NCBI GenBank assembly: GCA_051294905.1
Contig: CM119381.1
Span: 16,864,001-16,928,000 of the forward strand
Source of the DNA: Botryllus schlosseri
Lineage: Eukaryota
Length of the DNA stretch: 64,000 nucleotides
Direction: 5' to 3'
A program made the position numbers and the translations under genes. Positions 1,127 through 59,649 of this stretch are shown piece after piece; position 1 is the stretch's first letter, and the number at the start of each line of letters is the position of its first letter. Under the pieces are notes generated by a model. It did not search any database. It had not been told where the DNA came from and saw nothing but the letters and a program-made list of their open reading frames with translations.

Positions 1127-1811
1127 GTCCGATGCGATCTCGATAAATTCGATAATCCCGAGTACAGCTTTCTGCGGCCAGCTGTGTGTATCTCATTAGC
1201 GGTTATCTTTGATATCGGCTCTGTAAATTTTAATCTTACTACTCGCTTCTTGATTTTCTCTCTAGTAAAATTGGATTTTTGTGTCACGGGACGCCGCACT
1301 TTTCAAAAAATGCGCAATTAAACTGCGATTCCCCCAACATTAATAGGCAGCCGGACATTTCATTTCCGCTGATCATTAGTCAACACCCCGTAATCCGGCT
1401 TCTCACAAGTGATCTCTCTCGCGAGGAGAAATCAGATTTCAGCCGATGCAGACACTTACAGTAGACGAGATGGATAATAGTGTCCAGTCCTATACGTCGA
1501 TGGCTAGTTTCCTACTCATCTGATTCGACACACGAGTGATCTCACACGGCCGTTACGGACTCGATCTCACTATATACAAATTACGTTCAAACCACGAAAG
1601 TCTCTAATATGAATGTCCTAATCCCCGTAGATGTATACAAATTATCTGTAAAACGAAGGAGACATTTTGCGCAGCATAGATTTCATCAAATCATTCTCCG
1701 CTTCTCGAAAACGCGCTCTTCATACTGGCGTACTAACTTCATAAAGCTAGCTTCACTTGATTAATAGTATCGTGTATGTATTTTTGGGAGTATTTGTACA
1801 CAATTAGTTTG

Positions 1812-1838
1812 TTCTCTCTTTCTCTCCTCTCCCTCTCT
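1812..1838. repeat. imperfect (CT)n microsatellite
   Basis: ttctctctttctctcctctccctctc read directly. Confidence 0.7.
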
Positions 1839-2959
1839 TATCAAGCATTGATGGCTCCGATTAAGTATTACAGTCCAATTGCGCTAAATGTTATACTCAT
1901 TAGTAGCCATTATAATTTTAGTTGCTAATTTATTTACAGGGTGAGTTTATTCGTTCCTGAAGTAGTAAGTAGCCACACTGCTAAATAGTCTATACTTCAG
2001 TTGAAATAGTTTGGGCTATTTGTTGCTTGAACATTGGTATTTTCATCATGTAAAACCAGGTGGTAGAAAGTAGTTCACAGCATCATCGCAAAAGATACCC
2101 CCAAAACGGGGATGGGGACGCATACTACAATTGCGCAGTTCTAATAGGGTATATAAGATACAAAGGCGACCAAAAACAGAACAGAAGAGTTGTAGGCTAT
2201 ACAATGCACAATTGCACATGCGGCAGGAGTCTACGAAACACTCGACAATCAATGCGACGATTAGAGACCTCGCAGCTGTATCACCTATAGCCGGTAGTTT
2301 CGTTCAACACTAAAAAGTCATGTTAACACTGGAGCAAATATACGATAAACATACCGTCGAAGAGCTAAGTAATAATATAACTCAATTCGAAAACTGGCTT
2401 CAGTATGAACAGCGGCGTTTCTTATAACGTTTCGGTAAATTATAGGCAGTATGAACAGCGTTAGTTACGGCGAATAATTTGAAATTGGATACTCCAATAT
2501 GAAGTGGGTCTGGACGCCAGAAGGCCTACAAGTTCTCCCCGGCTTAGCTTGGCAATCGTACACCATCAAACGCATCCATTAGCTACTAATTTGTTAAAAC
2601 TGAGTGCTATATCATTCCTCATGAACAATTTGGCCTCCAGGCCTTTGATTGCTCTCGCGAATAGCTGGTTCTATGATACCACTAACGGAAGTTTGTGCAA
2701 TCATAGAAACGCAATATCTACTTAATGAAGGGAGCACTTCCATGCGCATGACAGAATTGATTAACGTATACCGGTCGCCATATATTCGAGTGCAAACTAT
2801 AAAAACACTGTCACTATTATAGAGATTTCTTAATGGTAAAAGTGAAAATTCCGGAGGATTGTCCACATGAGATTTTCCAGAAATTGTTCGTAAACCCTAG
2901 ATAAGTTTGTTATAAATCAAGCATGTGTTTTATACAATAGCCTATAAACATGTTAATTT

Positions 2960-44584: not shown

Positions 44585-47500
44585 TCACTGATAACTCTTC
44601 AAAATTCCGTAAAGAGTACAAGCAGCCTTGCCGTTGGGACACATCTTACTCCATAAATCTGGATGCGTAGACTTCATATCCGTAACATCCTAAACAAAAA
44701 CGCATCACATAGAAATCCCCCAAAAGATTCAGCCACATTCGAATTGTATTGGCGAGCGCGATCATGGGCTGGAAAATGTCGCCTTGCAAAGGACACTACC
44801 AACTGGCAGAGGGGTCATGGTCAAAGTAGCCAGCGTTGCTACTCAGGTGGAAATCACGCCGTGAATTTATATCGAATTGCAAGTAGAAGTAGTGAATTAG
44901 AAGACATGTAAAAACTACTTCAAGCAAAAGCAGAAAATGAAGAACAGAAAAGTACTCAAAAAGTAGCTCTGCTCGATGGGTCGCTGATAAAAACGATACA
45001 AATCTTGCCCAAACCTACATTCTACTTAACAAAATCCAAAGTTTTAAAAGCAGCTATCCCCTAAAACACTGTTAAGTAGAAGTAGTCTAAAAACAGAATA
45101 GGAACAAAATAGGTGGCGAGATAGCGTCGTGGCATAATCCACAGCTGCAACACCAATGGGTTGCGGGTTCGAGCCCGATCGAGGTCGATTCCAGAATTCC
45201 TACCTAAGTGTTGAAGGTTTATCTAGGCTCCTCCTCGCCATCTCATCCGTGTGAGTGGTGTCTTATAAAAGCCTAGAAGTGGGCCGTGCTACAAATCTGC
45301 AGCTACGGCATAAAAATGAAGAGAATTGACCTGGTATAAATGACCATAGTAGTCGACAAGCCCCATGAATACCACAAACAGCAACAAAGGAACAAAATAG
45401 GACGTTATACATTTTTCCTCGATGTTTTCGCGGCACATATGACTCATGATATTCAATACACACGATCTGTGCATATGCATAGTGCGAATGCAGGATATGC
45501 ATCGCTGGACAAGAAGGTGCAGATATAGCCTCCCGGAAATGCCGAGTGCCAAACGGGGAAGCCACAGATACCAGTTTTACTGAGCAGGTCTTTGGTTTAA
45601 CCTAGTCGGGGGTTACGCCCACAACCTACAGATCAAGAAGCCGGACGCTCCACTATTACGCAATCGTGTCGGTGGATAACCAAAATCAAAATAACCACTT
45701 TGGTGAGTAGTAAAAGACCTGACTACCTCTGCCAACTGGAATGCTTTAGAGATACTCAAGATGACTATTACGGAGCGGAGCAACATACTTGTTCTGGAAT
45801 AAAATGAAGATTTGTCGATTCATCGGTTTCGGCGCCGCCTTTCCTATAAGATTGGAGGACCTCTGTACTTGTCAAATGGCACCTGTAGGCAAAAAAGACC
45901 GTGACATGGTTCTCGCAATTACGGCATATTGATGTTCACATAAAACTAGGGTTGTATTGACTCGACTCGAGTGGAGATTTTTTTGGTGAATCGACCCGAA
46001 TCATTTTCCTAAATACGAAAAAGAAGAAGAAGAAAAAGAATAGCAAACCTTCCCCATCATTGGTATTTCGCCTATCGATACTTGAAATAGGACGAGAAAC
46101 TACCAATAGTGAGCAAATTCAATATCATCCGAGAAGAGTTGTAAAAAAGTAGGTGGAACACGACTTAAGCTCAAAACTGAACTGTGAACACAACGAGTCT
46201 TGGTATTATGACTCGGACTCGACCCTCTGCACTGTGACTAGGATTTGACTCAATGGTGAATTGAAAATGACTCGACTCGCGTGAAAACTATACCAGTGAC
46301 TTGTATATGAGTACCTTACAACTTGGTTACAACCTGGCATAGAACTATATAGATTAGGTAACCGTCACAATGTGGTACTCACCTCATCAGAAAGTACGCC
46401 ACCGCTCTGCCGGCACTCAAATTATTTCTGACCAGTCCCATCAGCATCGGTTCGCCAATTTTTTCAATGGACACATTTACCTGAGTTAAGAAAATTCGGT
46501 CGGGCGCTTGAAACATTCGTTAATAGCAGAGGTGGTCAGCAACGAAGTACTTCTACTTTTTCGGAGTACTCAAGTAGGTTTTGTCGACTTACAATACTTA
46601 CTCACATGCTACTGTTTTTAGTCTACTTCCACTTAGACTTATCATTTTTTTACGCAAAACCACTTTATTTTTACTCTCTGCTTGCATCAATTTCACAAAC
46701 AAAATTGTAACAACTTGTCGAAACAGCGCCTGCATCACAGTAACTCAACATATTTTCTAAAATCGCGACTATTTCCAGTGTCGTTTTGCGTGCACCTTGT
46801 ATTGCATTTTCAAAGTAAGCCGCCTCCGATTAGCCGTTAAAAGTAAGTGACCCATCGACCAAATTTGTGTCTTGAAACTATTTGTACATTGAAGAAATAA
46901 ATTTTATACTGCCACTTGATAGTTTGACATGCCTTGGAAATTCTTCCTTCTGCTTTGAGATGTTTTGGAAATTTCTACTACTACTACTACAACTACTAAT
47001 TGAGTAGAAATCTACAGCGTTAGTTCTGCTTCTACTTGAGTATACCAACGTTGACTACTTTTCACCACGTCTGGTTAAAGGCCACAACCAACCTCATCAC
47101 GAATCTCCTTCACTTGCGAGTGGAAAATTTCGTGCAACGCGCCGTCACAGTCGAGTTCGTCAAAAGAAACGAAGTCGTGAATCTCCAATCCGGCCGCGGC
47201 CTGCGCAAGTTGCAAAAAAATATTCGCATATGCGTAGGAGTATTGCTACCTTAACCACTAACCGATGGTTCCGGGTGCCCGCCTGGAACGTCGAGCTGCC
47301 CGGCGCTTTCCGCAAGCCACGAATTTCTCCACTGGAAAATGGCTTTGCCGTCGTCTGTGATAACGATGCCGGCAACACCCAAAGGTTCGGCAAGGTACGC
47401 CTGCAAGTATGTGCAGTGTGCACATTGGTCAGAGGTGATCAGCAACGAATTAGTTCTACCTTTTCAGAGTACCCAAGTAAGGTTTGCCTAATTGCGCGAC

Positions 47501-48959
47501 TTACTCATACAGTCATGTTTTCACGCTATTTCTACTAGATGAGTTTTTATACTGCTCAACTTTTTACAATTTGAATTTCTAAGTGAAACTGTCACAAATG
47601 TTCACATTGGATAGGATTGTAGCGTTAGTATACCAAAGTCGCAGCCATATCATTGATGACTAAGTAAGCATGTGCCCCTACTAAAACTAAAAAATAGCCC
47701 TACTTAGAAACCCGTCGGCTGCTGCAACCATTGAACTTTGGTTAATATGCAGCGTAGGGTTCAACGATTCAATTGGAGCAGTATCATTATCAAGCTATTT
47801 TGCGAGTAGAATAGCTGCTGGCACACAAAACCACCTGCGTCTGATTATAATCCTTGGCTCCCTTGGCCATCAATTCCTCAACTTCGTCAGCCCAATTCGT
47901 CTCCATATAGTCCCTGTAAAACGTGTAAAAGTACCCTAAATCAGATTTCTACGATCAAATCGGATACGCTCGGTAATGTATAAATTCCAATATCCCGGAA
48001 AACTGTCAAGTAGAAGTAGTATAAACCATAAACGCTTGAGTAGTGCAAACAAGCAGGCAAAACCTACTCGATTATTCTGAAAATGTAGAAGTACTTCGTC
48101 ACTCACAACCTCTGCATACCTGTAACAGGTGAGTCCGACGTTGAACGTTAGCTGTGCATTACCATCGTCGGAAGTGTATCGAACCGAGTGGATACGGAAT
48201 TTCTGCGCGTTGAACAGACGCGAGTTCCGTTGTTTTCTTATTTCCCAACGCTCGGCTATGCATTTCTCAAATTCAGGATCCACCTGCCGTAAAATCGAGC
48301 GTCACAAGTCAGTTAATGTCTAGCCCGGCCTTGTAATTACTAATCCTATGCAAATAAAAGTCAAAGGATATCAACGTAAATGTACGAACATCACAGTAGT
48401 CAAAGTTGCCACTAAAGTAGAAGTAAAAGTTAACACCTTGCTTCTACTCAATTACAAGTAAAAGTAGCTTTTTCCAAGCCATGCAAGCTACTTGAAGTGA
48501 AAGTGGAAAATGAACATCTGAAAAGTAGATTTCGTCGAAAAGTCATACTTTTAGCGGGTGGTCCAGTCTGAAATTGCAGGGTGCATCCTTGCGACTAACA
48601 AATCAGCCACTTACCGTCATACAGTGGGTATTTCACTCAGTCGTTATGACAATTTCACGCATAATCGTGAGGGAAAAATATCGCATATTGCTTGCTTATC
48701 AAGTCGTAACATAGATGTGTAAGTAGCCAAAACACATAACCACTTGATGAAGAAGTGCATGTAGGCAAAACCTACTTTACCATTCCGAAAATGTATCCGC
48801 ACTTCCATACTGACTACCTCTTATATTCACATAGCAAACTGTTACCTTCCGATTAAATTCGTCGGACATGGCTACTTTGCACATTGAGAGCGGCAGACCT
48901 GACTTCAATGGAGACGCGAACATGATAGAAATCTCGGGATCAAGAGCGTTACCCTCTGA
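44585..48959 (-). CDS. NUDT22: NUDT22-like Nudix hydrolase module (8 exons)
   Basis: LDPEISIMF..GLP, RLFNAQKFRIHS, GLTCYRDYMETNW, AYLAEPLGVAGIVITDDG, GQLDVPGGHPEP, HEIFHSQVKEIRDEVN, AGRAVAYF, ETDESTNL, LWSKMCPNGKAACTLY. These collinear motifs match NUDT22 as I recall it. Confidence 0.92.
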
Positions 48960-51900
48960 CTGCAAACAAGACGAATCCGCGTCCACAAAAATAAATGATA
49001 TTTTATGGCCAGTAAGACGTACAGAACTGCCAGGATTATCAGAGCCATCAAGCATCGCTATTCCATTGATGCCGCTAACTTGTTCAGCAGGAGACAAGCT
49101 TGATAGAACCTCATCACTTTTGGCATCTTGGGATGGATGAACTGATGGTTCTTCCGAAGAAGAGACCTGGGTAAATAAGTAAAATGTCGATACAACGGAA
49201 TTGTACCAAAGCAAATCCCAATCACACCTTTGTCCAGGACCCGCCTACGGTCACCGATTTACCCGGGACTGCGTTACTGGGTAGTCGTGATAAAATGACC
49301 TGTAACAAGAAAAGTACGATATCGCGTCTGCTTCGCGGAAAATTTCTCCAGCGGATACGATTTTCACACATTATCATTTGATAGCAAGGTGCCATGCGAA
49401 CTGGCATCTCATGTTACAACAAAGACTGGGCAAAGAGACTCTTGGAGGTGCAGAGCTTCAATACACAATTGAATAACATATACATATTGAAACAAACCCG
49501 AATATTTTCGGCTGACGGTCATAAGGTATAATCGTCAATAACTAGTAGAGATTTCAAAGGAACTTAACAGTCGTATCACCAAATATGACGTCACAGGCAC
49601 TAAGTATTCAAATAATTGAGGCGAACAGATTGCTTAGGCTCAGTTTACTAAGACTACGAGCATTGATTGCAACTATTATTGTCAAATGAGGAGAGATGTT
49701 TCTTTGAGTGCTGAAATTATAGTTTCAATAATTTTTTCCAACCATGGAACCTTGCTAAGTTGTAACATAGCATCCAAAATATGTAGCACATAGCTACGCC
49801 TGTCTTTGGGTACGATGACCTCACAGCATTGTCTGAAAACTCTATGAAATTGGTATGGTCCAAAAAACACCAAATTACGTACACAGTCTAATACTCGATT
49901 CGGAATGGAATCACTCAAGAACACAATTGTAGCCAACCCCAGTTACAACGTACCAAACCAACGCAAGAATATATCATCACGCTTTGTTACCTGTGGGCTC
50001 TTGTCCGTTGTGGACATGTGACTGATGACCATGCTTGATGTAGTGTGGCCCCACACCACTTCGACTGGAAAATGAAAGAAAAAGGCTTCATCGCACAGCA
50101 GAGATTGAATTGAATGGCGGACGATTTGGAGGGGCTGTGGGCGAAAACATACAAAGAGGGCGATTTGGGAGGGTGTTGAAAAATTTATAATCAGTGGAAG
50201 TTGATAGTTGTCTCATATCTCAGCGATGCCTAATCATCGTTGAACAAGTTTGTTGCCTTCAAAAATATTTTGATAAGGGTGAGTGAGTCTGAGTGGAAAC
50301 TTGAGATTAAAACAGAGACCTGTCAGTGAACGATTTTCTGTGGTATGCAATCGGTCTGAGAAATCGAAATTAGGACCTTTGTCGTGGTTTTGGCAAAACT
50401 GACAAAGTATGAAAGTACGGTATGGAAAAAGATTGCCATACTATGTCATACTATGCTCTGGAACTTATAAGTAGAAACACCATTGGCACAGCCTGCATTC
50501 ATACTTGACACCATGTGATATTGGATGAATTACACATCTGAATTCACACCCTACTGACTCACCAACATTTCGAGGACCATCAACGCAGTGATGCAGACAC
50601 AACAGGCCGGCTTGTTTCTCACACTCTGCGTTCAACATCGGCGAGCCTAACATACAATGGAACTGACTTGTTGTTCACACTGAGCGTAGATTTTTGCAAT
50701 ATTACCGAGAAAATCTTTAACGAGAGCGTCTTGAAGAGCTTGATACGGCTGGTCGTGGTTACGAAGACGTTCCGCACAGTTTTTACTCAGCATCGTGCTT
50801 ACTAGTTGTTCCCCGCAACCTGGAATAGGACGTAAATTCGTTCATGTGTGGCAAATCGAAAACCCAAGTGCCACAGAAAAACAGCCATTCCGCCAATACT
50901 ACAAAAACTAACCTACACACTTGCAAGCTAGCGTAGGCCCGTTGATCACATTCTCATTCTGAAGATCACCAAGTTATCTCGGAAGAAACCAGGAGTAAGG
51001 TCTCCATTCGGTAAATGTTGGCACTGTTAAATCTAGTTGATGCTGCAGCAGTGTTTCCGAACCTTTTTAGCTTCGGAAACCGGTAAATATTAAAAACAAA
51101 TTTTGCGGGCCGGTGAACCTTCAAAAATCGAAATAATCCGCAATGTAAATACGACAAATACATGCAACACAAAAGATGACATTGGAAACTTCATTTTAAT
51201 GAAAATTCGCTGTTGCCTCTTTGACGCTATTGAAGTTTCTCCAAGGTCCTTTCAAAAACTTCATTTCGATTTTTCGTTTTTTTATTATAAATAACAATGA
51301 CTATTCTGCTTGGCAGATTCCATGATACCCCAAAATGTCGCTAAAATGTACTTTTAAAATAAAACGAATATTGTTTGAAACTCTTTTTAGGTTCCACAAA
51401 TAACTGGTCTTGAATGAGTTGCATGCTACTTTCGAACATCTTGGTGCAATACCTGCAGCATTGTGACGTCCGCCAAGTCCATAGTAGACCATGAATTCTG
51501 CATTACGATTTGCATGCAATTGATGCATAAAATTGTAATATATTCAGGCAGACCTGCAGGAAAGTTGACACGCTACACATACACTGCCCGTTGAGAACCT
51601 CGATCTACTGTATTGAGCTGATAAATATATCCTATTCGTTTGATTTACGGTGCGTGATATGTGAATATTTTATAATGACCGTATCACAGGGACAAGTCAT
51701 AAATAGCATTAAAACCCACCACTCGCAGTTACAGCTACTGAAGGAGAATCTCCTCTTCCCGGCTCGGCCCAACATCCACATCCATAAACAGCAGCCTGCG
51801 CATGTACAGTACATAGTTGCATCTATTGAATACGAGTAACCCGCAATTCACTTTAAAATCCTACCTGACCGACTCTACCAGGCATCTTCAAGACGATCCC

Positions 51901-54900
51901 TCCGCTCGAAACAGCAGAAGCGACGTTCCCGTTCAAATCCAACGCGACAGCGCCAACTGTGTCCAGTCTGATGATAACAACTTCGATTAAACGCGGATTC
52001 AAACAAGCCGAGTATCTCAACTACCTTTCGCGGTCCTGGCAAGCTTCCTGGTGTCGGCGATTACGCGCCAATTTCTCCAGCAGTCTCTGATGATATTTCT
52101 GCCACGACTTGAGAGCAGACTCTACACAAAATTAAATCCGAATTAGGGATTGCAACGAGTTATCTCGCAAACCAGTTCAGAACTTACCACTCACCAAATC
52201 GCCCGATTCGCACATTTTAACGCCGTGCGCTTTGGCCCAGTTTTCCGCCCCGGAGGATACCATGAAGCTGACGAATACTACAAAGTTTATCCACACGTTT
52301 CATCAGTACCAGCCATATTTAGTTTCTACCTTGGCGGAATACGTCCCAATTCTAGTCGACTTCTCCTTCTTTGTTCGGATAGAACTTTGTACGCGGCACG
52401 AACAGGATTTTTGACTTTGCTTACGCAAGCAACGGAACCGAAGTAGCTATCACATCGGTTTGCAGGATCTGAATTACAATCGGAGTAGACTGGTCGTCGA
52501 GTGGTAAAGCCAGTAAAGCTATATTTGATATGCACTACAATCTAGCGGAACTGAATTCAATAAACTCGGCCATAACCAACTGTAATACAAGTCAAAAGAA
52601 AATGACATCATGCTATCTGATTTTCAATGACCGATTGTATTCTGAATGAATTTTTCAATTCGTCAATTTCACAAACTTCCACCTTTATTACTGAGCTGCA
52701 TTCTCAATATTAAAAACGTAAGTCTTGCCGCAACAGCCCACCTTTTGATTAGCACTGAAGAGCAAGCTTAATATTTTCAACATTTATCATTAGTTAGATG
52801 ATAATAGTTAGATAGTTATGATAACCCGTAACACAATTTTAATTTAATCACCACAAAACCGTGACAATCCCAGACATACGTGTCCCGGTGTAGTCATTTC
52901 GCATACCTGAGGATGGCGAAGTATCCATCACACTTGCGTCGCATTCCACCTGACCCGACTCGGTGAGATTCGAACCGTACCCGGCATTTGTCAGTTCGCT
53001 ATCCTGCACAAGAACAATCACAATTTGCACAGGAACATATTCCAAAGTCAAATCATGTGTCAAGTAACGCAAATTTTTAAAGTGACTCGAGTCGAGTCAA
53101 GTTATCTCTAACTTTTTGATTTCGAGTCAACTCCAAGTTATCAAATCATTTTAGTTTGTTTTGTTTGGTTTCAATGTACGGATGGATACACATATTTGCA
53201 TATAGGCTATAGTCAAACTTGGTGCCACACCACTTTTAAAATTCAATTCTTACGAATGAATATATTCGCATGGTCGCAATGATATCATAATGCAGGCCTG
53301 GCAGTTAAATGCATGTCTGTTTTGTCTGCGATTTCGCTCCTGATTGAAGTAACGATATTAAAAACTTTAACGGAAATGGAATCCAGTAAAAGGGTTAGCA
53401 TTGATCATGCGGCTTTGCGAAGGAGAGTATTTGACGACTTGAAAATGGAGTCATAAATTATTACATATTTTCCATACGTCGAGTCCACGTCAAGTTAAGT
53501 CGTTTTAGTAAGTCAAATAATATCGAAAACGTGACTAGAGTCAACTTGAAATGGCAGCAATCATACTTCTAACATCTGTACAGCAAGAGCGGTCGCCTCC
53601 CCTGCCGAGACACCCTCCCTGATTTTGCGACTAACAGCAGTGCAGACCGTTTTACAAAGCTGGCTATAGCCCGGGTATCTTTCGTCAGAATGGTAGCCAG
53701 CGCCTGCAATGGTTTCAGTATAAAAATCTGCGCAAAGACGTTGAACCGAAAGGTACCTACCAACATGAATAGCTATGAATCCAACATCAATCTTTTGACA
53801 TCTTAACGCAAATAAGTATATTAACTTCACATCTGACTAATTAAAAGTAAGTATTCTAAGCCTTGTTATTGCCTTCAAAACTGAATACTGTCAAGTAGAA
53901 GTTGTAGTCTAAAATTAAAACCACTTGAGCGTACTGAGCAAGTAGCCAAAACCTGGTGCAGTATTCAAAAAGGTAGAAGTACTTGGTTACTGACCACCTC
54001 TGAAGCAGACATACCTTAGCGCGGCGAGATCGCAGTACGGTTGGGAGTTGACTTGTACGATATTCGTAACGCTAGGAGGAGACACATCTTTCACCGGCAC
54101 TTCTTCTGATGACGAAGGTTTAGGTAGGGCCGTCGCTTTACCAGAGGCGAGAAATATGTGGTTGTGAATAGTCTGGCAAATAAATTTCAAGTGTTGGACC
54201 GTTGACGAATGGGTCGTAACGATTCGTTCATTCGTTAGGGTTGGGTATAGCAATTCAAGTACTCGAATCTGCATAGAGTATTAATTTTGACGATTGGGGT
54301 ACCAAAAAATTATAGGTTCCTTATTATTTTATGAATGAAAATTGTCATTGCGATACTTTCTTGTGGCAGCGGCAGCCTTGAAACCACAATAAGAGGAAGT
54401 ATATCATTCAATGCATGCAGCAACAGGCTACAGCATTTCTGTATAGTAATGACAGACCTGTGGCGTTGTCTTATATATAGCAATGACACTGTCAGCAAAT
54501 TTGAAATGATTTACATAGAATGATTTACATAGATTATTTACTTTATTGTCGCATAAAAAAATGTATTTGGAGCAGGGTTGTAATGAGGCCCGATTTTTTG
54601 GTGACTCGAATTGACTCGAGTCATTTTTTCAAATCCCTAACATGACTCGACTCGAGTCAATTTGTGTATTGACTCGACTTGTACTCGGGTCATTGCGCAT
54701 GACTCGAACCAAGTCATTTCACTCGAGACATTTCATGGTAACTTCGAAGAACAGTAATTTAACGGTATATATTTTGGGTAATTATGAATAACACATTGAA
54801 AAAATCAGTATCGTAAGATCTACAGGATATGAAACATAGGTATTGGAAACGACGTTTGGGTCTTATATAGATTGAAGTCCATGCGGCATATCGAAGCGTT

Positions 54901-57900
54901 ACACAGGAAATGATAACCTGACAAAGCATGTAATATGTGTATGGTGTGAAATATCGAGAAGAATTGACATTCAATTCAGAATCGAATCAATCAGGTATTC
55001 GAAATTGCCCAATCCTAATTTCTACAAAATGTACCTTTGTGGTGGGAAAGAATCTCTTATTGTCGAGTTTTGGTTTTTCGTTGTCGTCCGCATGAGCGAA
55101 TAATGTATTCAAGACGTAATCGCTGATCATTGATTTCAAGCTTGGAATGTCGTATATTCCTTTGAAAAAACATCTCAATTGTCGGTCTGAAATCGGTGCT
55201 ATTTGCTGAAACGAGAAGACGTTACCGTTCCGGACGAGTTCTCGAACTTTGTTAATGACCCGTTTGTCGAGCTGCGTTGTGTTGGTCCGAGATACTATTT
55301 CGTGATTGGTATGAGAAGCAACAAGCGGAAATCGAAAATAGTGTACATCTGGAGAATAACAATGATGGATAAGCATTTAAGCAACCTAAACAAAGATGAA
55401 CTAAGTTATATTCAGCAATTTAGGAATAGTAGTGATTAGATCAGGGCTTCTTCAACTGGAGCCCATGGACTGAGTCCGCGGACTCTATGTAAAGGGTCCA
55501 TGAAGGGTCGATGTTGAAAATACAACTGCACACTATAAAATTACGTTATCCTAATTTATAAGATATGTCCCTATTTTTGACATGTCCACATAGGCGCTGA
55601 ACTCCGATTTTCCCTAGGTATGCGGTATCGATGACGTCACAAAGGGCTGACGTCATAGTGCGTCAGAATTGACAAATGAGCCGACTCGCAAGCGTTCAAT
55701 ATCACCTGTCACTTGTATATGGTGACAAAATTACGATAGTATTAAGCAGGCGCGCAGCCGGCCGGCCGCTTGCTGAATTGATTTCAAATTTACCAAGGTA
55801 GAATCAGTTTATTATGGTCAAGTGCATGCACCAATGATGATAATAGATCGATCGGATCAGCATCCTAGCGTAACGGCCTCACACGTAGCCTAATACTCGA
55901 CACTACTACGACACATCACGCTACGATAGGATTACTAGCGAACACTCCGACTACGCAGTCAATTAGCGAGCTCGCAATCTCCCGCAACATATTCGCCAAC
56001 ACGCGCGCCGACAATCAGGAAATTTCAATTACTCGGCTCGAGAACAAACGAATACGCATCTGTGGCGACGGCTAATAATCTAAAGTTACAAGAACTATTC
56101 TCACAAATGTGCGTGCTGGACTCTATATTCATTAGTCACTCTGATTGCAGGGGAGTCAGAAGTTTCGATATCAAGAGCCTGCAAGACAATTTTCTGATGT
56201 TCTGTTTTAGTATTAGCGTTAATCAAAATCAATTACGCCGCTGTCTGTTCACGATCAGTATGTATTTTAATCAATTCTGTCCATGTTCAATGTCTGAGCC
56301 AGTCCGACATCACAATCTCGGAAAACGCGGCAGTTCCGGCCGGTGCATCATATCATATTCCGACACAGCAAGTATTAGTGGAAATCAAGTACGCATGTAC
56401 GTGTACGGTGTACGCACGCGTCGCAAATGCTTGCGGACATTCGATGCCATTCAGTTTCGCGATGTCAATCTTTAATCACAATCGAGAGCCAAAGCATTCT
56501 AGGCACGAGACGCGATCGTTAGTCTAATGATGCTATATTTCGTAACAGGCCTATTGCACACACAATTGTGTAGGTAGACCAACGATGGTATCGTGTGCAG
56601 GCCAGCGATGGTATAGTGCGTACTGGGCCTATTCCCGATGCGATTCTTCAAGCCAGCGGAACGAGGCTTGATGGAGGCGCGATAAATCAGGCCAGCGACG
56701 ATCGCAGAGCGCGCGGCAATCAATGACTTCGGAATCATCTCAGCGCGAGATCGCGTTGCGTTACATCGTGCACAAACTATTCTCGCTAATTGGAAACACG
56801 CTTCTCGTTAATTGGCCGTGGCCGCGCACGACACTGATAAAATAAGACTTACGGAATTGCAACTGAATATTAACGTCAGAATGGTCATTTCAAAAGGACG
56901 GGGTTGTGCTACGCGCATGAATGTATTGCTTCTGATTTGATTAAGTGTTCAGCAGCAGTACGAAATACATTGCTTAATTCTAAATCGATCAATTCACCAG
57001 CCAGCCTAGCCGAATTCTGGGTATGCCGCATACCTAAAAAAATTCCTAGGTATGCGCGGCATACCTAGCATACCTGAGTTCAGCGCCTATGCATGTCCAT
57101 GTTATATTTTATTTACTGCGCTCACCACAGCTCAAATCGCCACTAGGACAACACGGTCACTAGTAATTTCACTGCGACTGATGAGACGGCTTGGCCGAAG
57201 TGATGACCTATTTTAATTATATATCCATCATGCAGTTGTTTAGTCATCAACTAGACCAGATGGTAATGAGCCCATGATCAGGAGTATTTGACTGTCCGCA
57301 ATATTGATCCCCGTCAACTACAGTCGTGGTTGTGCAATTCAAAAAAATTTCTCGGAATCTGATAAACTCATCGCCAGGCTTCAAGTGATTCGACTTGACT
57401 CGAGGCATTTTCTCCTAATACTGAAATGACTCGACTCGAGTCAATCTGTGTATTGCCTCGACTTGGACTCGAGTCGTTGCTCATGACTCGAACCAAGTCA
57501 TATGACATGAGACTCAGACGGTCAAGACCGACATTTCATTGTAATTTCGAAGAATAGTGAAGTAACCACACTGCTGGATTTTCCTCTATTGGTACTGGTA
57601 GGAAAATTAGCATATTGTAAATGCGAACCATTCAATATCACCAAATCGAGTTATAAAAAGTGGATTTAACAAGACTTCAACTGGAAACTGAGCAGTCAAC
57701 ACAATGACAGAACTCGGGTTATAATACCATGACTCGGACTCGATCCTCTGCTCGGCAACTTGGACTCGGACTTGAATCGGTGGTTCATTGAAAATGACTC
57801 GACTCGAGTCAAAACTTAAATAGTCAGATTGGCTTGTGACTCGGGGCCTGGAGACTTGGTTAAAACCCTTGTCATCGCATGCAACTCTAAACAAGATCAC

Positions 57901-59649
57901 ATTCACTTTGGTTTCACAAATTAGAATATTCATTCATTTAAACAAGTCTCCTTAGCTCTAGAAAGTTAGCAAATATATGGGGTCAAGGAATGCATAAAAC
58001 ACCTGACCCTGCACATCGAAGAATGCAGAAGAGAAGTCACTAAGCAGTTACCAATCACTGACAAAGTACTTTTACTTCTTTGGAGTATTCAAATGGGCTT
58101 AGGCCTACTTCCACTTCAATTGGACAGTTTTTAGCTGTTGATGCAAATACTAGGACTAGAATACATGCTTGCTATTTCTGGTTATCCTTATGTCAATGGT
58201 ACAGTAAATGGTCATCAAACTGTAAGTATCTACATTTTTAATAACTATAACTTGAAAGATCACAATGAAAGGAATAAACAGACACCTTCATATTTAACCG
58301 GTTTATCCGCATGCAGAGCTTCCAGAAGTCTATCCTTTGCATCATCCTTTGCTCCTTGTGTAACATCAGCAGGATCGACCATTGGCAAACCGAACTCGTT
58401 ATAAACTCTAGCCGTGCGAAACTGTAAATTACAAAACATAATACCGTATTCAAAATTTAGAAAGATACCGATTCTGATATATCATATCAACCTGTATGGA
58501 TGCATTGCAACTTGTTTGATTCAACTGTCTTTTCCTAGAATTCTGTGCATTGCAAGTTTGAATGAGTATTTCACAATGAGACAAGCGTACCTCAATGCAT
58601 GCAACATACTTTGTTAGCTGGTGAGGCCTCGTTACAGACCCACTTCTCTGACTTGATGACTTCGAAGGCGTGACCGAAGTATTGGATCGGGACATTTCCA
58701 TTCAGTTGCTGGAAGTAAATCGCTGTCAAAGAGACATATTTGAGTGCGAAACGGCATACAGTTTATCTGTACTGGTTGCAGTTTTTGAATGTGTGAGATG
58801 GAAACTATGAATCGATGACATGTTTTCAACTAACAGGGCATGTAAGAGGAAATTATAGGCACACGCAACTCGCACAGCCACAGGCATAGTACGAGCATGA
58901 AATATTAGAAAAAGTGGTAGAAAATTAACCGAAGGTAAAATTTTTGTAATAATGAAGAGGTGTCATGGACTTGTAAAGACGAAGTGAGTTCAGATGTCTT
59001 TACAATGAACAAGTCAAAAATTGGTGGCACTGCGTCGGGTTCACTGGTTGGACATAAGGAAAATTTGGTGTGCAGCGTTTTTTTCGGCAACCCAACAATT
59101 TGGTCAGTGAATCCCATGAATCCGGAAAAACAAGTTATTTTTGAACAACCCTACTGTGTACATCTACATGAGTACCAACCATGACCCCTGTATATTGAAG
59201 GGCTTACATCGTAGCCCTAGGCTACTGGAATCGCGGTACGTTTTGCCTGATATATCAGGTGAGCAGCGACGATTTTCCAAGTTGAAGTAATTTAATAAAA
59301 AATAATAAAAAACTAAAACATAGCGTGAGCACAGGACACCGATTCCATACAGGCATTGTAGTAATGCCCAAGTTCATTAATGATAGTCTAACAATGTTTA
59401 CAAAACAATGAAAGGCAAGCTCCAGTCACAAAATGTCGTACTTGATCTAGAGGAGCCATCCCGCTTGAAACGTTTCGATTGGCCTTTGGCATGTGACGCC
59501 GCGCAGAAAAAACTGCCACCGGTGACAGCGAGGAAGCCTTCGATCAATGTTTTTGTGCATCCGGAGAACTTTCCATAGCCGTAGCATTCGTTGGCGTCTT
59601 TATCGAAATCGATCAAATTTTTCTTCAGAAATCTTTCTGCATCATCCAT
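44585..59649 (-). CDS. predicted CaRF-like / Taspase-1 / NUDT22 triple-fusion protein, 28 exons, 1023 aa
   Basis: Exons 59442-59649, 58610-58722, 58492-58542, 58286-58421, 55226-55348, 55035-55159, 54015-54172, 53761-53801, 53567-53703, 52907-53003, 52330-52468, 52188-52267, 52025-52121, 51865-51967, 51720-51795, 50706-50819, 50563-50646, 49991-50064, 49228-49299, 49023-49166, 48846-48959, 48120-48283, 47835-47913, 47263-47400, 47093-47200, 46383-46480, 45789-45882 and 44585-44689 all join through GT-AG introns in matching phase, giving 3072 nt with no internal stop. The true N-terminus may lie further upstream. Confidence 0.72.
45113..45400 (+). mobile_element. candidate tRNA-derived SINE in the last NUDT22 intron
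   Basis: Pol III A-box-like TAGCGTCGTGG (45122-45132) and B-box GGTTCGAGCCC (45166-45176) at tRNA-like spacing, but no full cloverleaf. The 3' boundary is uncertain. Confidence 0.45.
46528..47071. mobile_element. CAGAGGTGG-family MITE, near full length
   Basis: Termini CAGAGGTGGTCAG / TTCACCACGTCTG; near-TSD GTTAATAG / GTTAAAGG. Confidence 0.6.
49222..53801 (-). CDS. TASP1: Taspase-1 (threonine aspartase 1, Ntn-hydrolase) module (12 exons)
   Basis: GFIAIHVGAGYHS, DSELTNAGYGSNLTESGQVECDASVMD, FGSVACVSKVKNPV, GRIPPSFMVSSGAENWA, autocleavage site RLD/[42 protein letters not shown] (catalytic Thr codon 51958-51960), SGCGEQLV, VVWGHTTSSM, ILSRLP..PGKSVTVGG. The unspliced frame stops at 49222-49224. 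Confidence 0.95.
54015..59649 (-). CDS. CARF: CaRF-like (calcium-responsive transcription factor) DNA-binding domain module (7 exons)
   Basis: YFGHAFEVIKSEKWVC, LNQTSCNASIQFRTARVYNEF, YFRFPLVASHTNH, LDKRVINKVRELVRNG, RFFPTTKTIHNHI are collinear with CaRF motifs recalled from memory (KATCPARIYIK, YVQLPTQQAHQYH, LHPQVAHKIQELVSQG, FFPTVNDIKNHI). This needs confirmation by profile search. Confidence 0.75.
55589..57091. mobile_element. hAT-type non-autonomous element, 1503 bp, in CARF-module intron 4
   Basis: Perfect 16-bp TIR CATAGGCGCTGAACTC / GAGTTCAGCGCCTATG; exact TSD CATGTCCA (55581-55588, 57092-57099); CCTAGGTATGC subterminal repeats. Confidence 0.92.

What the first reader, a model, noticed from the sequence alone, without database searches (positions are those of the whole stretch)
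53761..54172. Taspase-1 has no start of its own and is spliced to a transcription-factor DNA-binding domain
Seen: the last CARF-module exon (54015-54172) has no stop and ends at a strong phase-2 donor (AG|GTATGT). The first Taspase exon starts at TTAAG|A TGT CAA AAG ATT GAT GTT GGA TTC in the same phase. Its only ATG is out of frame (ATG TCA AAA GAT TGA), and the first in-frame Met lies after the conserved HxGAG motif. An AAG acceptor is also used at 55160. Established: Taspase substrates (MLL/trithorax, TFIIA) act on chromatin. Inference: a sequence-specific, DNA-tethered protease that could process these factors at chosen promoters.
Basis: partly seen in the sequence, partly recalled or inferred. 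Interest (0 to 1): 0.82.

Follow-up and report, generated by a model that had tools for sequence, protein, structure and literature searches.

The report
Ascidian Taspase fused to CaRF module
In this sea-squirt genome the only gene for the chromatin-factor protease Taspase-1 has no start codon of its own and is spliced in frame behind a module related to the DNA-binding core of the transcription factor CaRF, and four other sea squirts show the same join, which suggests, but does not show, a protease aimed at DNA or chromatin.

Summary

- **Splice.** On the minus strand, exon 54172-54015 has no stop and a phase-2 donor. It joins through a 213-nt GT..AG intron to the 41-nt first Taspase exon 53801-53761. 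Spliced contigs from two studies show this joint.
- **Reading frame.** The frame is open from ATG 59649, through seven CaRF-like exons, into Taspase-1 and on into a NUDT22-like domain.
- **No own start.** The first Taspase exon has three ATGs, all out of frame.
- **Conservation.** Styela, Ciona and Clavelina have the same ALS2CR8 + Taspase + NUDT22 proteins. In Styela the junction exon is also 41 nt, in the same phase and without an ATG.
- **Copy number.** This is the only Taspase locus and the only CaRF-like locus found in the 495-Mb genome.
[quoted passage not shown] It lacks CaRF's N-terminus and activation domain.

DNA binding and promoter-targeted cleavage remain untested inference. The exon 3 to exon 4 joint was not printed. 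Literature searches found no description of this fusion, although automatic annotation lists the orthologues as "uncharacterized".

The parts
59442..59649 (-). Exon 1: ATG at 59649, start of the CaRF-like module (MDDAERFLKK...SSRS), ends in phase 1.
   Evidence: ORF and splice sites. Aligns from Met1 with Styela, Ciona and Clavelina. X1 contig 59337-59595 with 0 mismatches.
58610..58722 (-). Exon 2 of the CaRF-like module (IYFQQLNGNVPIQYFGHAFEVIKSEKWVCNEASPANK).
   Evidence: X1 contig 58610-58738 with 0 mismatches.
58492..58542 (-). 51-nt micro-exon (NSRKRQLNQTSCNASIQ): a basic, NLS-like stretch plus a conserved Cys.
   Evidence: tblastn against Styela residues 109-135. Splice sites cacag|AATTCT...ATACAG|gttgat, phase 0/0. 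The low X1 depth in this bin fits exon-only cover.
58286..58421 (-). Exon 3 of the CaRF-like module (FRTARVYNEF...KPVKYE), ends in phase 1.
   Evidence: X1 depth 3.85 in the bin. The joint to exon 4 was not printed.
55226..55348 (-). Exon 4 (DVHYFRFPLVASHTNHEIV...VRELVRNG).
   Evidence: X2 record 10 covers 55350-55225 and is spliced at this acceptor. Pfam ALS2CR8 E 1.1e-5 on the ORF that spans exons 4 and 5.
55160..55225 (-). 66-nt intron with an AAG acceptor. It is in frame and has no stop, so retention would add 22 residues.
   Evidence: Joint 55158>55225 in X1 and X2; the retained form is seen in X1 record 5, 55131-55262. Styela has an intron at the same position.
55035..55159 (-). Exon 5 (IYDIPSLKSMISDYVLNTLFAHADDNEKPKLDNKRFFPTTK).
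   Evidence: Pfam ALS2CR8 profile positions 184-222. Joints on both sides.
54015..54172 (-). Exon 6, the last CaRF-like and linker exon: no stop, phase-2 donor AG|GTATGT. It holds the conserved PPSVT.. motif.
   Evidence: Joints 54172>55035 (X1, X2 and 2 raw reads of X23) and 53801>54015 (X1, X2). Aligns to Styela residues 261-315.
53802..54014 (-). The 213-nt junction intron (GT..AG, acceptor TTAAG). It holds no usable start exon.
   Evidence: Skipped in one contig each of X1 (side 49) and X2 (side 42). ATG scan.
53761..53801 (-). First Taspase exon, 41 nt ((R)CQKIDVGFIAIHVG). It has three ATGs, none in frame.
   Evidence: Styela's equivalent exon is also 41 nt, in the same phases and without an in-frame ATG.
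53567..53703 (-). Second Taspase exon (AGYHSDERYPGY...AVQMLE), behind a 57-nt in-frame intron.
   Evidence: Joint 53702>53760 in X1 and X2. Matches human Taspase-1 residues 47-93.
52907..53003 (-). Third Taspase exon (DSELTNAGYGSNLTESGQVECDASVMDTSPSS).
51856..51966 (-). Taspase exon with the autoprocessing site LD|TVGAV. The Thr nucleophile codon is at 51960-51958.
   Evidence: Matches human Taspase-1 residues 232-266, E 8e-10. tblastn against Styela.
44600..51800 (-). The rest of the same gene: Taspase beta-subunit exons and the NUDT22-like exons, colinear with Styela residues 554-1046.
   Evidence: tblastn. The Styela C-terminus matches human NUDT22 at E 3e-61. Exon borders here were not refined.

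Best explanation
This is a true, old gene fusion, not a read-through transcript.

**Shown.** The window holds the ascidian orthologue of a single gene, ATG 59649 to about 44600 on the minus strand. It encodes, in one reading frame:
- a CaRF-like module of about 290 residues, with the DNA-binding/NLS-homologous part and the second conserved CaRF domain;
- a predicted disordered linker of about 45 residues;
- a complete Taspase-1;
- a NUDT22-like Nudix domain.

The CaRF-to-Taspase join is an ordinary cis-splice, donor 54015 to acceptor 53801. It enters Taspase where the match to human Taspase-1 begins (human residue 42), so the module and linker replace the roughly 40-residue N-terminal tail of the human enzyme.

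**Inferred from what is established for Taspase-1 (autoproteolysis at D233|T234).** The proenzyme cuts itself at LD|TVGAV. The alpha chain then carries the CaRF-like module at its N-terminus. No Q-[ILV]-D|G site lies between the module and Taspase, so the module stays attached.

**Inferred function.** The module supplies nuclear import through its basic SRKRQ/KKRK stretch, and it targets the only Taspase of these animals to DNA or chromatin, so that cleavage of nuclear substrates is concentrated at particular sites.
For: **Splice**
- GT..AG joints 55158>55225, 54172>55035, 53801>54015 and 53702>53760 appear in contigs of X1 and X2, from two studies.
- X2 record 10 (481 nt) runs exon 4, exon 5, exon 6 and then 62 nt more. 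That length fits Taspase exon 1 plus about 21 nt of Taspase exon 2.
- The genome has no second copy that could be a processed pseudogene, so these contigs must come from RNA.

**Frame**
- The ORF is unbroken from Met1 into Taspase.

**Conservation**
- Styela XP_039248440 has PF15299 (E 2.8e-18) plus PF01112 (E 1.5e-53).
- Ciona and Clavelina have the same architecture. The Phallusia cDNA-derived protein begins in the linker and runs into Taspase.
- Styela shares the intron positions, and its junction exon is also 41 nt, phase 2.

**Single copy**
- This is the only Taspase locus. The other Asparaginase_2 locus is aspartylglucosaminidase.
- No second locus resembling the Styela module was found.

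**Module identity**
- The middle part matches human Taspase-1 at E 5e-90, starting at human residue 42.
- The window's own exons match human residues 47-93 and 232-266, including D|T.
- The model of the N-module matches CaRF of four mammals, E 5e-14 to 2e-13, mouse residues 182-520.
- The CaRF DNA-binding/NLS domain lies just before residue 292, and CaRF binds DNA directly (PMC2877716).

**Linker**
- pLDDT is about 30 over Styela residues 275-320.
- No Taspase cleavage motif occurs before residue 700 in any orthologue.
Against: - The exon 3 to exon 4 joint across the 2.9-kb intron was not among the printed joints.
- X2 shows no cover on exons 1-3, although it has 12.5x downstream. A 5'-shorter isoform without the DNA-binding half is therefore possible.
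- X1 and X2 are only guessed to be RNA runs.
- The raw reads (X23, 6% sampled) gave only 2 junction reads, neither on the key joint.
- DNA binding by the ascidian module is untested.
- The module lacks CaRF's N-terminal region and activation domain.
- Pfam on the window's own exons stays just under the cut-off (26.0 against 28.9 bits).
- The structure model is of modest confidence (pLDDT 60.6) and has no significant match among solved structures.
Confidence: 0.72

Rival explanations
1. The fusion is real, but the CaRF-like module no longer acts as a sequence-specific DNA binder. It would serve instead as a nuclear-import, regulatory or protein-docking extension of the Taspase alpha subunit, so Taspase acts in solution as in other animals.
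For: - The module keeps only the part that aligns with mouse CaRF 182-520 and has lost the activation domain and N-terminus.
- Two residues invariant in the other three ascidians differ in the window: C23>G and R48>C.
- There is no significant match to any solved DNA-binding fold.
- Human Taspase-1 needs no DNA-binding domain to cleave its known nuclear substrates MLL and TFIIA (abstracts of PMC4220155 and PMC4905357, listed).
Against: - The half homologous to the DNA-binding/NLS region is conserved among four ascidian species, with about 30 invariant positions in the first 140 residues. Most of these are kept in the window.
- It is the only CaRF-like sequence found in the genome. If CaRF's DNA-binding role survives in ascidians, it is carried here.
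Confidence: 0.2
2. The joined transcripts are a minor conjoined or read-through form. The main products would be separate, made from an alternative first exon, spliced-leader trans-splicing or internal initiation for Taspase, and from intron retention or early polyadenylation for a CaRF-only protein.
For: - Tunicates use operons and trans-splicing (my own knowledge).
- X2 lacks exons 1-3.
- Retention of the junction intron would end a CaRF-only protein after 11 codons (ALRYVCFRGGQ*) in the window, and at once in Styela.
- Ciona has an in-frame Met in VGMIAIHLG.
Against: - Neither the window's nor Styela's first Taspase exon has an in-frame ATG.
- The CaRF-like part has no stop of its own.
- The only joint printed at acceptor 53801 comes from 54015.
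- Colinear single ORFs are conserved in four species, including the linker.
- A spliced leader added at 53801 would put an out-of-frame 4-codon ORF first.
Confidence: 0.06
3. The CaRF-like exons are a decaying transposon or pseudogene remnant in the 5' region of the Taspase gene, exonised by accident in this species.
For: ALS2CR8-like sequences are multi-copy in some invertebrates (my own recollection, not tested). Dispersed repeats lie in the neighbouring introns.
Against: - The sequence is single-copy here.
- The frame is open over seven exons.
- It is orthologous and colinear in four other ascidians, with shared intron positions in Styela.
Confidence: 0.02

Closest known systems
Human and vertebrate Taspase-1 (TASP1, threonine aspartase; PDB 2A8I/2A8J)
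   Same: - Same Asparaginase_2 fold family.
- E 5e-90 from the Styela orthologue to the human enzyme over human residues 42-412.
- The window keeps HVGAGYHS and the LD|TVGAV autoprocessing site with the nucleophile.
   Different: - The human enzyme is a free-standing 420-residue protein with its own start and a short N-terminal tail.
- Here that tail is replaced by a CaRF-like module of about 290 residues plus linker.
- The C-terminus runs on into NUDT22.
- There is no separate start codon.
CaRF / CARF (ALS2CR8; calcium-response factor, Pfam PF15299)
   Same: - Pfam PF15299 hits the Styela orthologue at 67 bits.
- The structure model matches CaRF of cow, rat, human and mouse at E about 1e-13, over mouse residues 182-520. 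That range spans the DNA-binding/NLS region and the second conserved domain (PMC2877716).
- It is single-copy per genome, as reported for CaRF.
   Different: - It lacks CaRF's N-terminal region (human coding exons 1-5) and the C-terminal activation domain.
- Taspase follows in place of the activation domain.
- DNA binding is not shown for the ascidian module.
- PMC2877716 lists CaRF orthologues in vertebrates, amphioxus and Nematostella, and its text does not mention Ciona.
Proteases that bind DNA (SPRTN/Wss1, Lon; from my own knowledge)
   Same: A protease joined in one polypeptide to a DNA-contacting part, so that proteolysis is localised on chromatin.
   Different: Those proteases bind DNA without sequence specificity and degrade DNA-protein crosslinks or bulk substrates. 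Here a site-specific processing protease would be joined to a domain homologous to a sequence-specific binder. They share no homology.
Tunicate operons and conjoined genes
   Same: Neighbouring coding units end up on one primary transcript.
   Different: Here the units share one reading frame, with no internal stop or start, and cis-spliced junction introns that are conserved in Styela.

Membership tests
Taspase-1 (threonine aspartase, Ntn hydrolase, PF01112) | Asparaginase_2 domain that is closest to Taspase-1 rather than to asparaginase or aspartylglucosaminidase | tested here: met
   The Styela orthologue has PF01112 at E 1.5e-53. It matches human Taspase-1 at E 5e-90, against 9e-25 for the best asparaginase. 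The window's exons are colinear with it at 44-77% identity, and they hit only Taspase-1 chains for the N-terminal exon.
Taspase-1 (threonine aspartase, Ntn hydrolase, PF01112) | Autoprocessing site Asp|Thr with the Thr nucleophile (human D233|T234) | tested here: met
   The window's LDTVGAVALDLNGNVASAVSSGG aligns with human residues 232-266.
Taspase-1 (threonine aspartase, Ntn hydrolase, PF01112) | N-terminal strand and the HxGAGxHS loop | tested here: met
   VGFIAIHVG|AGYHS spans the 57-nt intron.
Taspase-1 (threonine aspartase, Ntn hydrolase, PF01112) | Free-standing gene with its own start codon | tested here: not met
   There is no in-frame ATG in the first Taspase exon or in the junction intron. 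The exon is spliced to exon 6. The same holds in Styela.
Taspase-1 (threonine aspartase, Ntn hydrolase, PF01112) | Cleavage of Q-[ILV]-D|G-x-D-D substrates | not testable with these tools
   This needs an enzyme assay. The consensus is taken from PMC3102056.
CaRF / ALS2CR8 (PF15299) | Pfam PF15299 match above the gathering score | tested here: inconclusive
   The window's exon 4-5 ORF scores 26.0 bits against a cut-off of 28.9. The exons could only be scanned singly. The Styela orthologue scores 67.1 bits, and the window aligns colinearly with it.
CaRF / ALS2CR8 (PF15299) | Homology covers the region of CaRF needed for DNA binding (DBD/NLS, just before mouse residue 292) | tested here: met
   Foldseek aligns Styela module residues 9-320 with mouse CaRF 182-520, E 1.6e-13, probability 1.00. 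Domain order is from PMC2877716. This was tested on the orthologue's model (pLDDT 60.6), not on the window's own protein.
CaRF / ALS2CR8 (PF15299) | Full CaRF architecture (N-terminal region, DBD/NLS, intermediate domain, activation domain) | tested here: not met
   Only the middle two parts are present. Met1 aligns near mouse residue 182, and Taspase follows where the activation domain would be.
CaRF / ALS2CR8 (PF15299) | Direct sequence-specific DNA binding | not testable with these tools
   This needs EMSA, SELEX or ChIP.
Read-through / operon pair of separate genes | Each unit has its own stop and start codon | tested here: not met
   Exon 6 has no stop, and Taspase exon 1 has no in-frame start.

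The most novel reading that the evidence does not exclude
In ascidians the sole Taspase would be one arm of a self-processing three-part protein.
- A CaRF-type DNA-binding module would tether the protease to specific genomic sites.
- There it would cleave chromatin and basal-transcription factors locally.
- A conserved (Q/x)-[LMV]-D|G site would let it release the NUDT22 Nudix hydrolase.

Read as a Rosetta-stone fusion, this predicts a so far unknown functional link between CaRF, Taspase-1 and NUDT22 in other animals, including vertebrates.
Probability: 0.2. Interest if true: 0.8.

Novelty: new variant of a known kind. Interest (0 to 1): 0.62.

Why it matters
Taspase-1 is the only known protease of its type. 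It processes MLL-family methyltransferases and TFIIA, and how it finds its substrates in the nucleus is poorly understood.

Here is a whole animal clade in which the only Taspase is covalently joined to the only CaRF-type DNA-binding module, and to NUDT22. This is a natural experiment:
- It gives a directly testable model of site-directed proteolysis on chromatin.
- Ciona, a tractable system, carries the same fused gene and could be used to test it.
- It offers a Rosetta-stone hint that CaRF, Taspase-1 and NUDT22 act in one pathway elsewhere.
- It suggests why PMC2877716 lists no tunicate CaRF orthologue: the ascidian CaRF sits inside proteins annotated as "uncharacterized".

Tried and rejected
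- **Pfam on single exons.** Only exon 5 (E 0.018) and the exon 4-5 ORF (E 1.1e-5) hit ALS2CR8. Exons 1-3 and 6 gave nothing.
- **Representative search with the 79-residue junction ORF.** It returned only 9 hits, but one of them was the key Styela protein.
- **Protein search with Styela residues 1-300.** It found only the query itself, so no CaRF sequences could be fetched for a direct alignment.
- **Profile of the three fused proteins.** It found no further fused proteins. Spread beyond ascidians is therefore unknown, because of the word and length filters.
- **PF15299 search of the window's own genome.** It found nothing, not even this locus, so that negative result is worthless. The single-copy claim rests on the protein search.
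- **WRKY/GCM1/FAR1-like zinc-finger idea for the N-half.** I rejected this for lack of evidence.
  - VIA-align against solved chains gave Z of 5.6 or less.
  - Residues 1-195 matched only the class-II tRNA-synthetase sheet.
  - Residues 197-279 matched helix-turn-helix folds (Tc3, Mu and TnsB transposases, Myb, homeodomain), all below the tool's noise level.
  - Foldseek against the PDB gave nothing.
- **Run X20 (organism B RNA).** It laid 0 reads, so it was no test.
- **Run X23 raw reads.** They were too sparse.
- **Taspase cleavage motif in the CaRF-Taspase linker.** None is present in any species.
- **Second Asparaginase_2 locus on C14 as a possible stand-alone Taspase.** It is aspartylglucosaminidase.
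- **Literature.** Searches for taspase with ascidian, Ciona, ALS2CR8 or NUDT22 gave 0 papers each.
Full report
**What is in the sequence.** The gene lies on the minus strand. The exon at 54172-54015 reads TIHNHIFLASGK...PPSVTNIVQVNSQPYCDLAAL without a stop. It ends GCGCTAAG|GTATGT, with two bases left over. The next exon begins GCGTTAAG|A TGT CAA AAG ATT GAT GTT GGA TTC at 53801 and ends CATGTTG|GTAGGT at 53761, so it is 41 nt long. AG+A makes Arg, and the frame continues through a 57-nt intron into AGYHSDERYPGY.... The 213-nt intron between the two exons holds only two ATGs, each followed by an early stop. The next in-frame Met lies in QMLE, behind HVGAGYHS.

**RNA evidence.** Contigs of two runs from different studies (X1, X2) and raw reads of one RNA-seq run (X23) were laid on 53600-59599. 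GT..AG skips were found at:
- 55158>55225 (66 nt);
- 54172>55035 (862 nt; also 2 raw reads of X23);
- 53801>54015 (213 nt; one contig in each of X1 and X2, with 49 and 42 letters on the shorter side);
- 53702>53760 (57 nt).

One X2 contig of 481 nt, at depth 12.5, covers exon 4, exon 5, exon 6 and 62 further letters. That length fits the 41-nt Taspase exon plus about 21 nt of the next exon. X1 and X2 are only guessed to be RNA runs. However, the genome holds no second copy of either part, so the spliced forms cannot be DNA of a processed pseudogene. Exons 1-3 are covered in X1 at a depth like that of the downstream exons, with zero depth in the repeat-free intron bins. Their words are held by RNA-like runs of five studies.

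**Gene model.**
- ATG 59649.
- CaRF-like exons: 59649-59442, 58722-58610, a 51-nt micro-exon 58542-58492 (NSRKRQLNQTSCNASIQ), 58421-58286, 55348-55226, 55159-55035 and 54172-54015.
- Taspase exons: 53801-53761, 53703-53567, 53003-52907 and onward.
- The frame is open throughout.
- tblastn with the Styela protein shows colinear matches from 59637 down to 44600, covering Taspase and a NUDT22-like part.

**Relatives.** A search with the junction ORF found a 1059-residue Styela clava protein (XP_039248440, "uncharacterized") in which the Taspase match begins at residue 326. Pfam finds ALS2CR8 at residues 65-268 and Asparaginase_2 from residue 324. Ciona intestinalis (1002 aa) and Clavelina lepadiformis (1011 aa) have the same two Pfam families. 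A Phallusia cDNA-derived protein (769 aa) begins in the linker and runs into Taspase. The window's model aligns with them from Met1 through the linker into Taspase. In the Styela locus the exon borders fall at the same protein positions. The junction there is GA|GTGAGT ... tttcag|A AAT CAA AAG, the exon is again 41 nt, and it again has no in-frame ATG. The window therefore comes from an ascidian, and the fusion predates the split of these ascidian lineages.

**Copy number.** In the 495.5-Mb genome the Taspase part matches only this locus. One other locus, at 26% identity on contig 14, is aspartylglucosaminidase. The N-module matches only this locus. A Pfam-profile search of the genome missed even this locus, so it is uninformative.

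**Identity of the parts.**
- *Taspase.* The Styela middle part matches human Taspase-1 at E 5e-90, starting at human residue 42. The window's own exons match human residues 47-93 and 232-266, including D233|T234.
- *C-terminus.* The Styela C-terminus matches human NUDT22 at E 3e-61.
- *N-module.* An AlphaFold model of the Styela module has mean pLDDT 60.6, an ordered core at 75-89, and residues 275-320 near 30, which suggests a flexible linker. It matches the AlphaFold models of CaRF from cow, rat, human and mouse at E 5e-14 to 2e-13, with Styela residues 9-320 on mouse 182-520.
- *CaRF domains.* According to PMC2877716, CaRF consists of an N-terminal region, a DNA-binding/NLS domain, an intermediate conserved domain (mouse residues 292-472) and an activation domain, and it binds DNA directly and specifically. 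The ascidian module thus corresponds to the DNA-binding/NLS part plus the intermediate domain. It lacks the N-terminus and the activation domain.
- *Solved structures.* None matches the module significantly.

**How it most likely works.**
- *Shown:* one mRNA and one open frame.
- *Inferred from established Taspase biology (autoproteolysis at D|T; abstract of PMC3343046, listed):* the proenzyme cuts itself, and the alpha chain then carries the CaRF-like module on a flexible linker. No Q-[ILV]-D|G site (consensus from PMC3102056) lies between the module and Taspase in any species, so the module is not released.
- *Inferred function:* the module brings nuclear import and DNA or chromatin targeting to the only Taspase of these animals.

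**Open points.**
- The exon 3 to exon 4 joint was not among the printed joints.
- X2 has no cover on exons 1-3. Its long contig is spliced at the exon 4 acceptor to 11 unread letters. This may be a fall-off of cover towards the 5' end, or a shorter isoform without the DNA-binding half.
- DNA binding is untested.

**Novelty.** Full-text searches for taspase together with ascidian, Ciona, ALS2CR8 or NUDT22 found no paper. The orthologues exist only as automatically predicted "uncharacterized" proteins. I rate this a new variant of a known kind: known domains in an undescribed, conserved arrangement.

Noticed in passing
window 49035-49055 (MLD|GSDN), and orthologues P0010 residue 701, P0011 residue 731, P0012 residue 463, P0002 residue 743: A Taspase-type cleavage motif sits in the linker between Taspase and NUDT22 in all five species: QMDG, QVDG, QLDG, LDGNMD, and MLDG in the window. 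This fits self-release of the Nudix domain and is the subject of another first-reader note.
   Followed up: partly
window 58492-58542 (-): A 51-nt micro-exon encodes a basic stretch (SRKRQ here; KKRK, RKRK and KRK in the orthologues) just before a conserved Cys-x-A-x-I motif. It is a likely nuclear localisation signal of the CaRF-like module.
   Followed up: partly
window 55160-55225 (-): This 66-nt intron is in frame and free of stops. X1 holds both the spliced form and a retained form (contig 55131-55262). Retention would insert 22 residues into the module.
   Followed up: partly
window 54601-54729 and 57385-57513: Two copies (84% alike) of a dispersed repeat rich in GACTCGAGTC palindromes lie in introns. 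Depths of 10^4 in the RNA-like runs, and many false 'joints' between the two copies, show a highly abundant repeat family.
   Followed up: partly
window 55632-55655 (-), within the CpG-rich stretch of about 55600-56800 in the 2.9-kb intron 3: Two TGACGTCA (CRE-like) palindromes lie 16 bases apart. Contigs at about 92% identity cover the area, so it may be a repeat family or an internal promoter. An in-frame ATG at 55376 lies just upstream of the exon 4 acceptor.
   Followed up: no
window 54056-54079 (-), in exon 6: The otherwise variable linker carries a small conserved motif: PPSVTNIV here, PPSVTKVM in Styela, and P-V-V-x-(D/E)-I in Ciona, Clavelina and Phallusia. Its function is unknown.
   Followed up: no
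L007 (G000:C14:6985540-6989151), ORF 1219-2286 (-): A single-exon 356-codon ORF is the aspartylglucosaminidase orthologue (PDB 1apy, E 3e-64).
   Followed up: yes
L013 1038-2255 (Styela locus): In Styela a histone H2A gene lies about 750 bp upstream of the fused gene's start, on the other strand. The window's upstream region was not compared.
   Followed up: no
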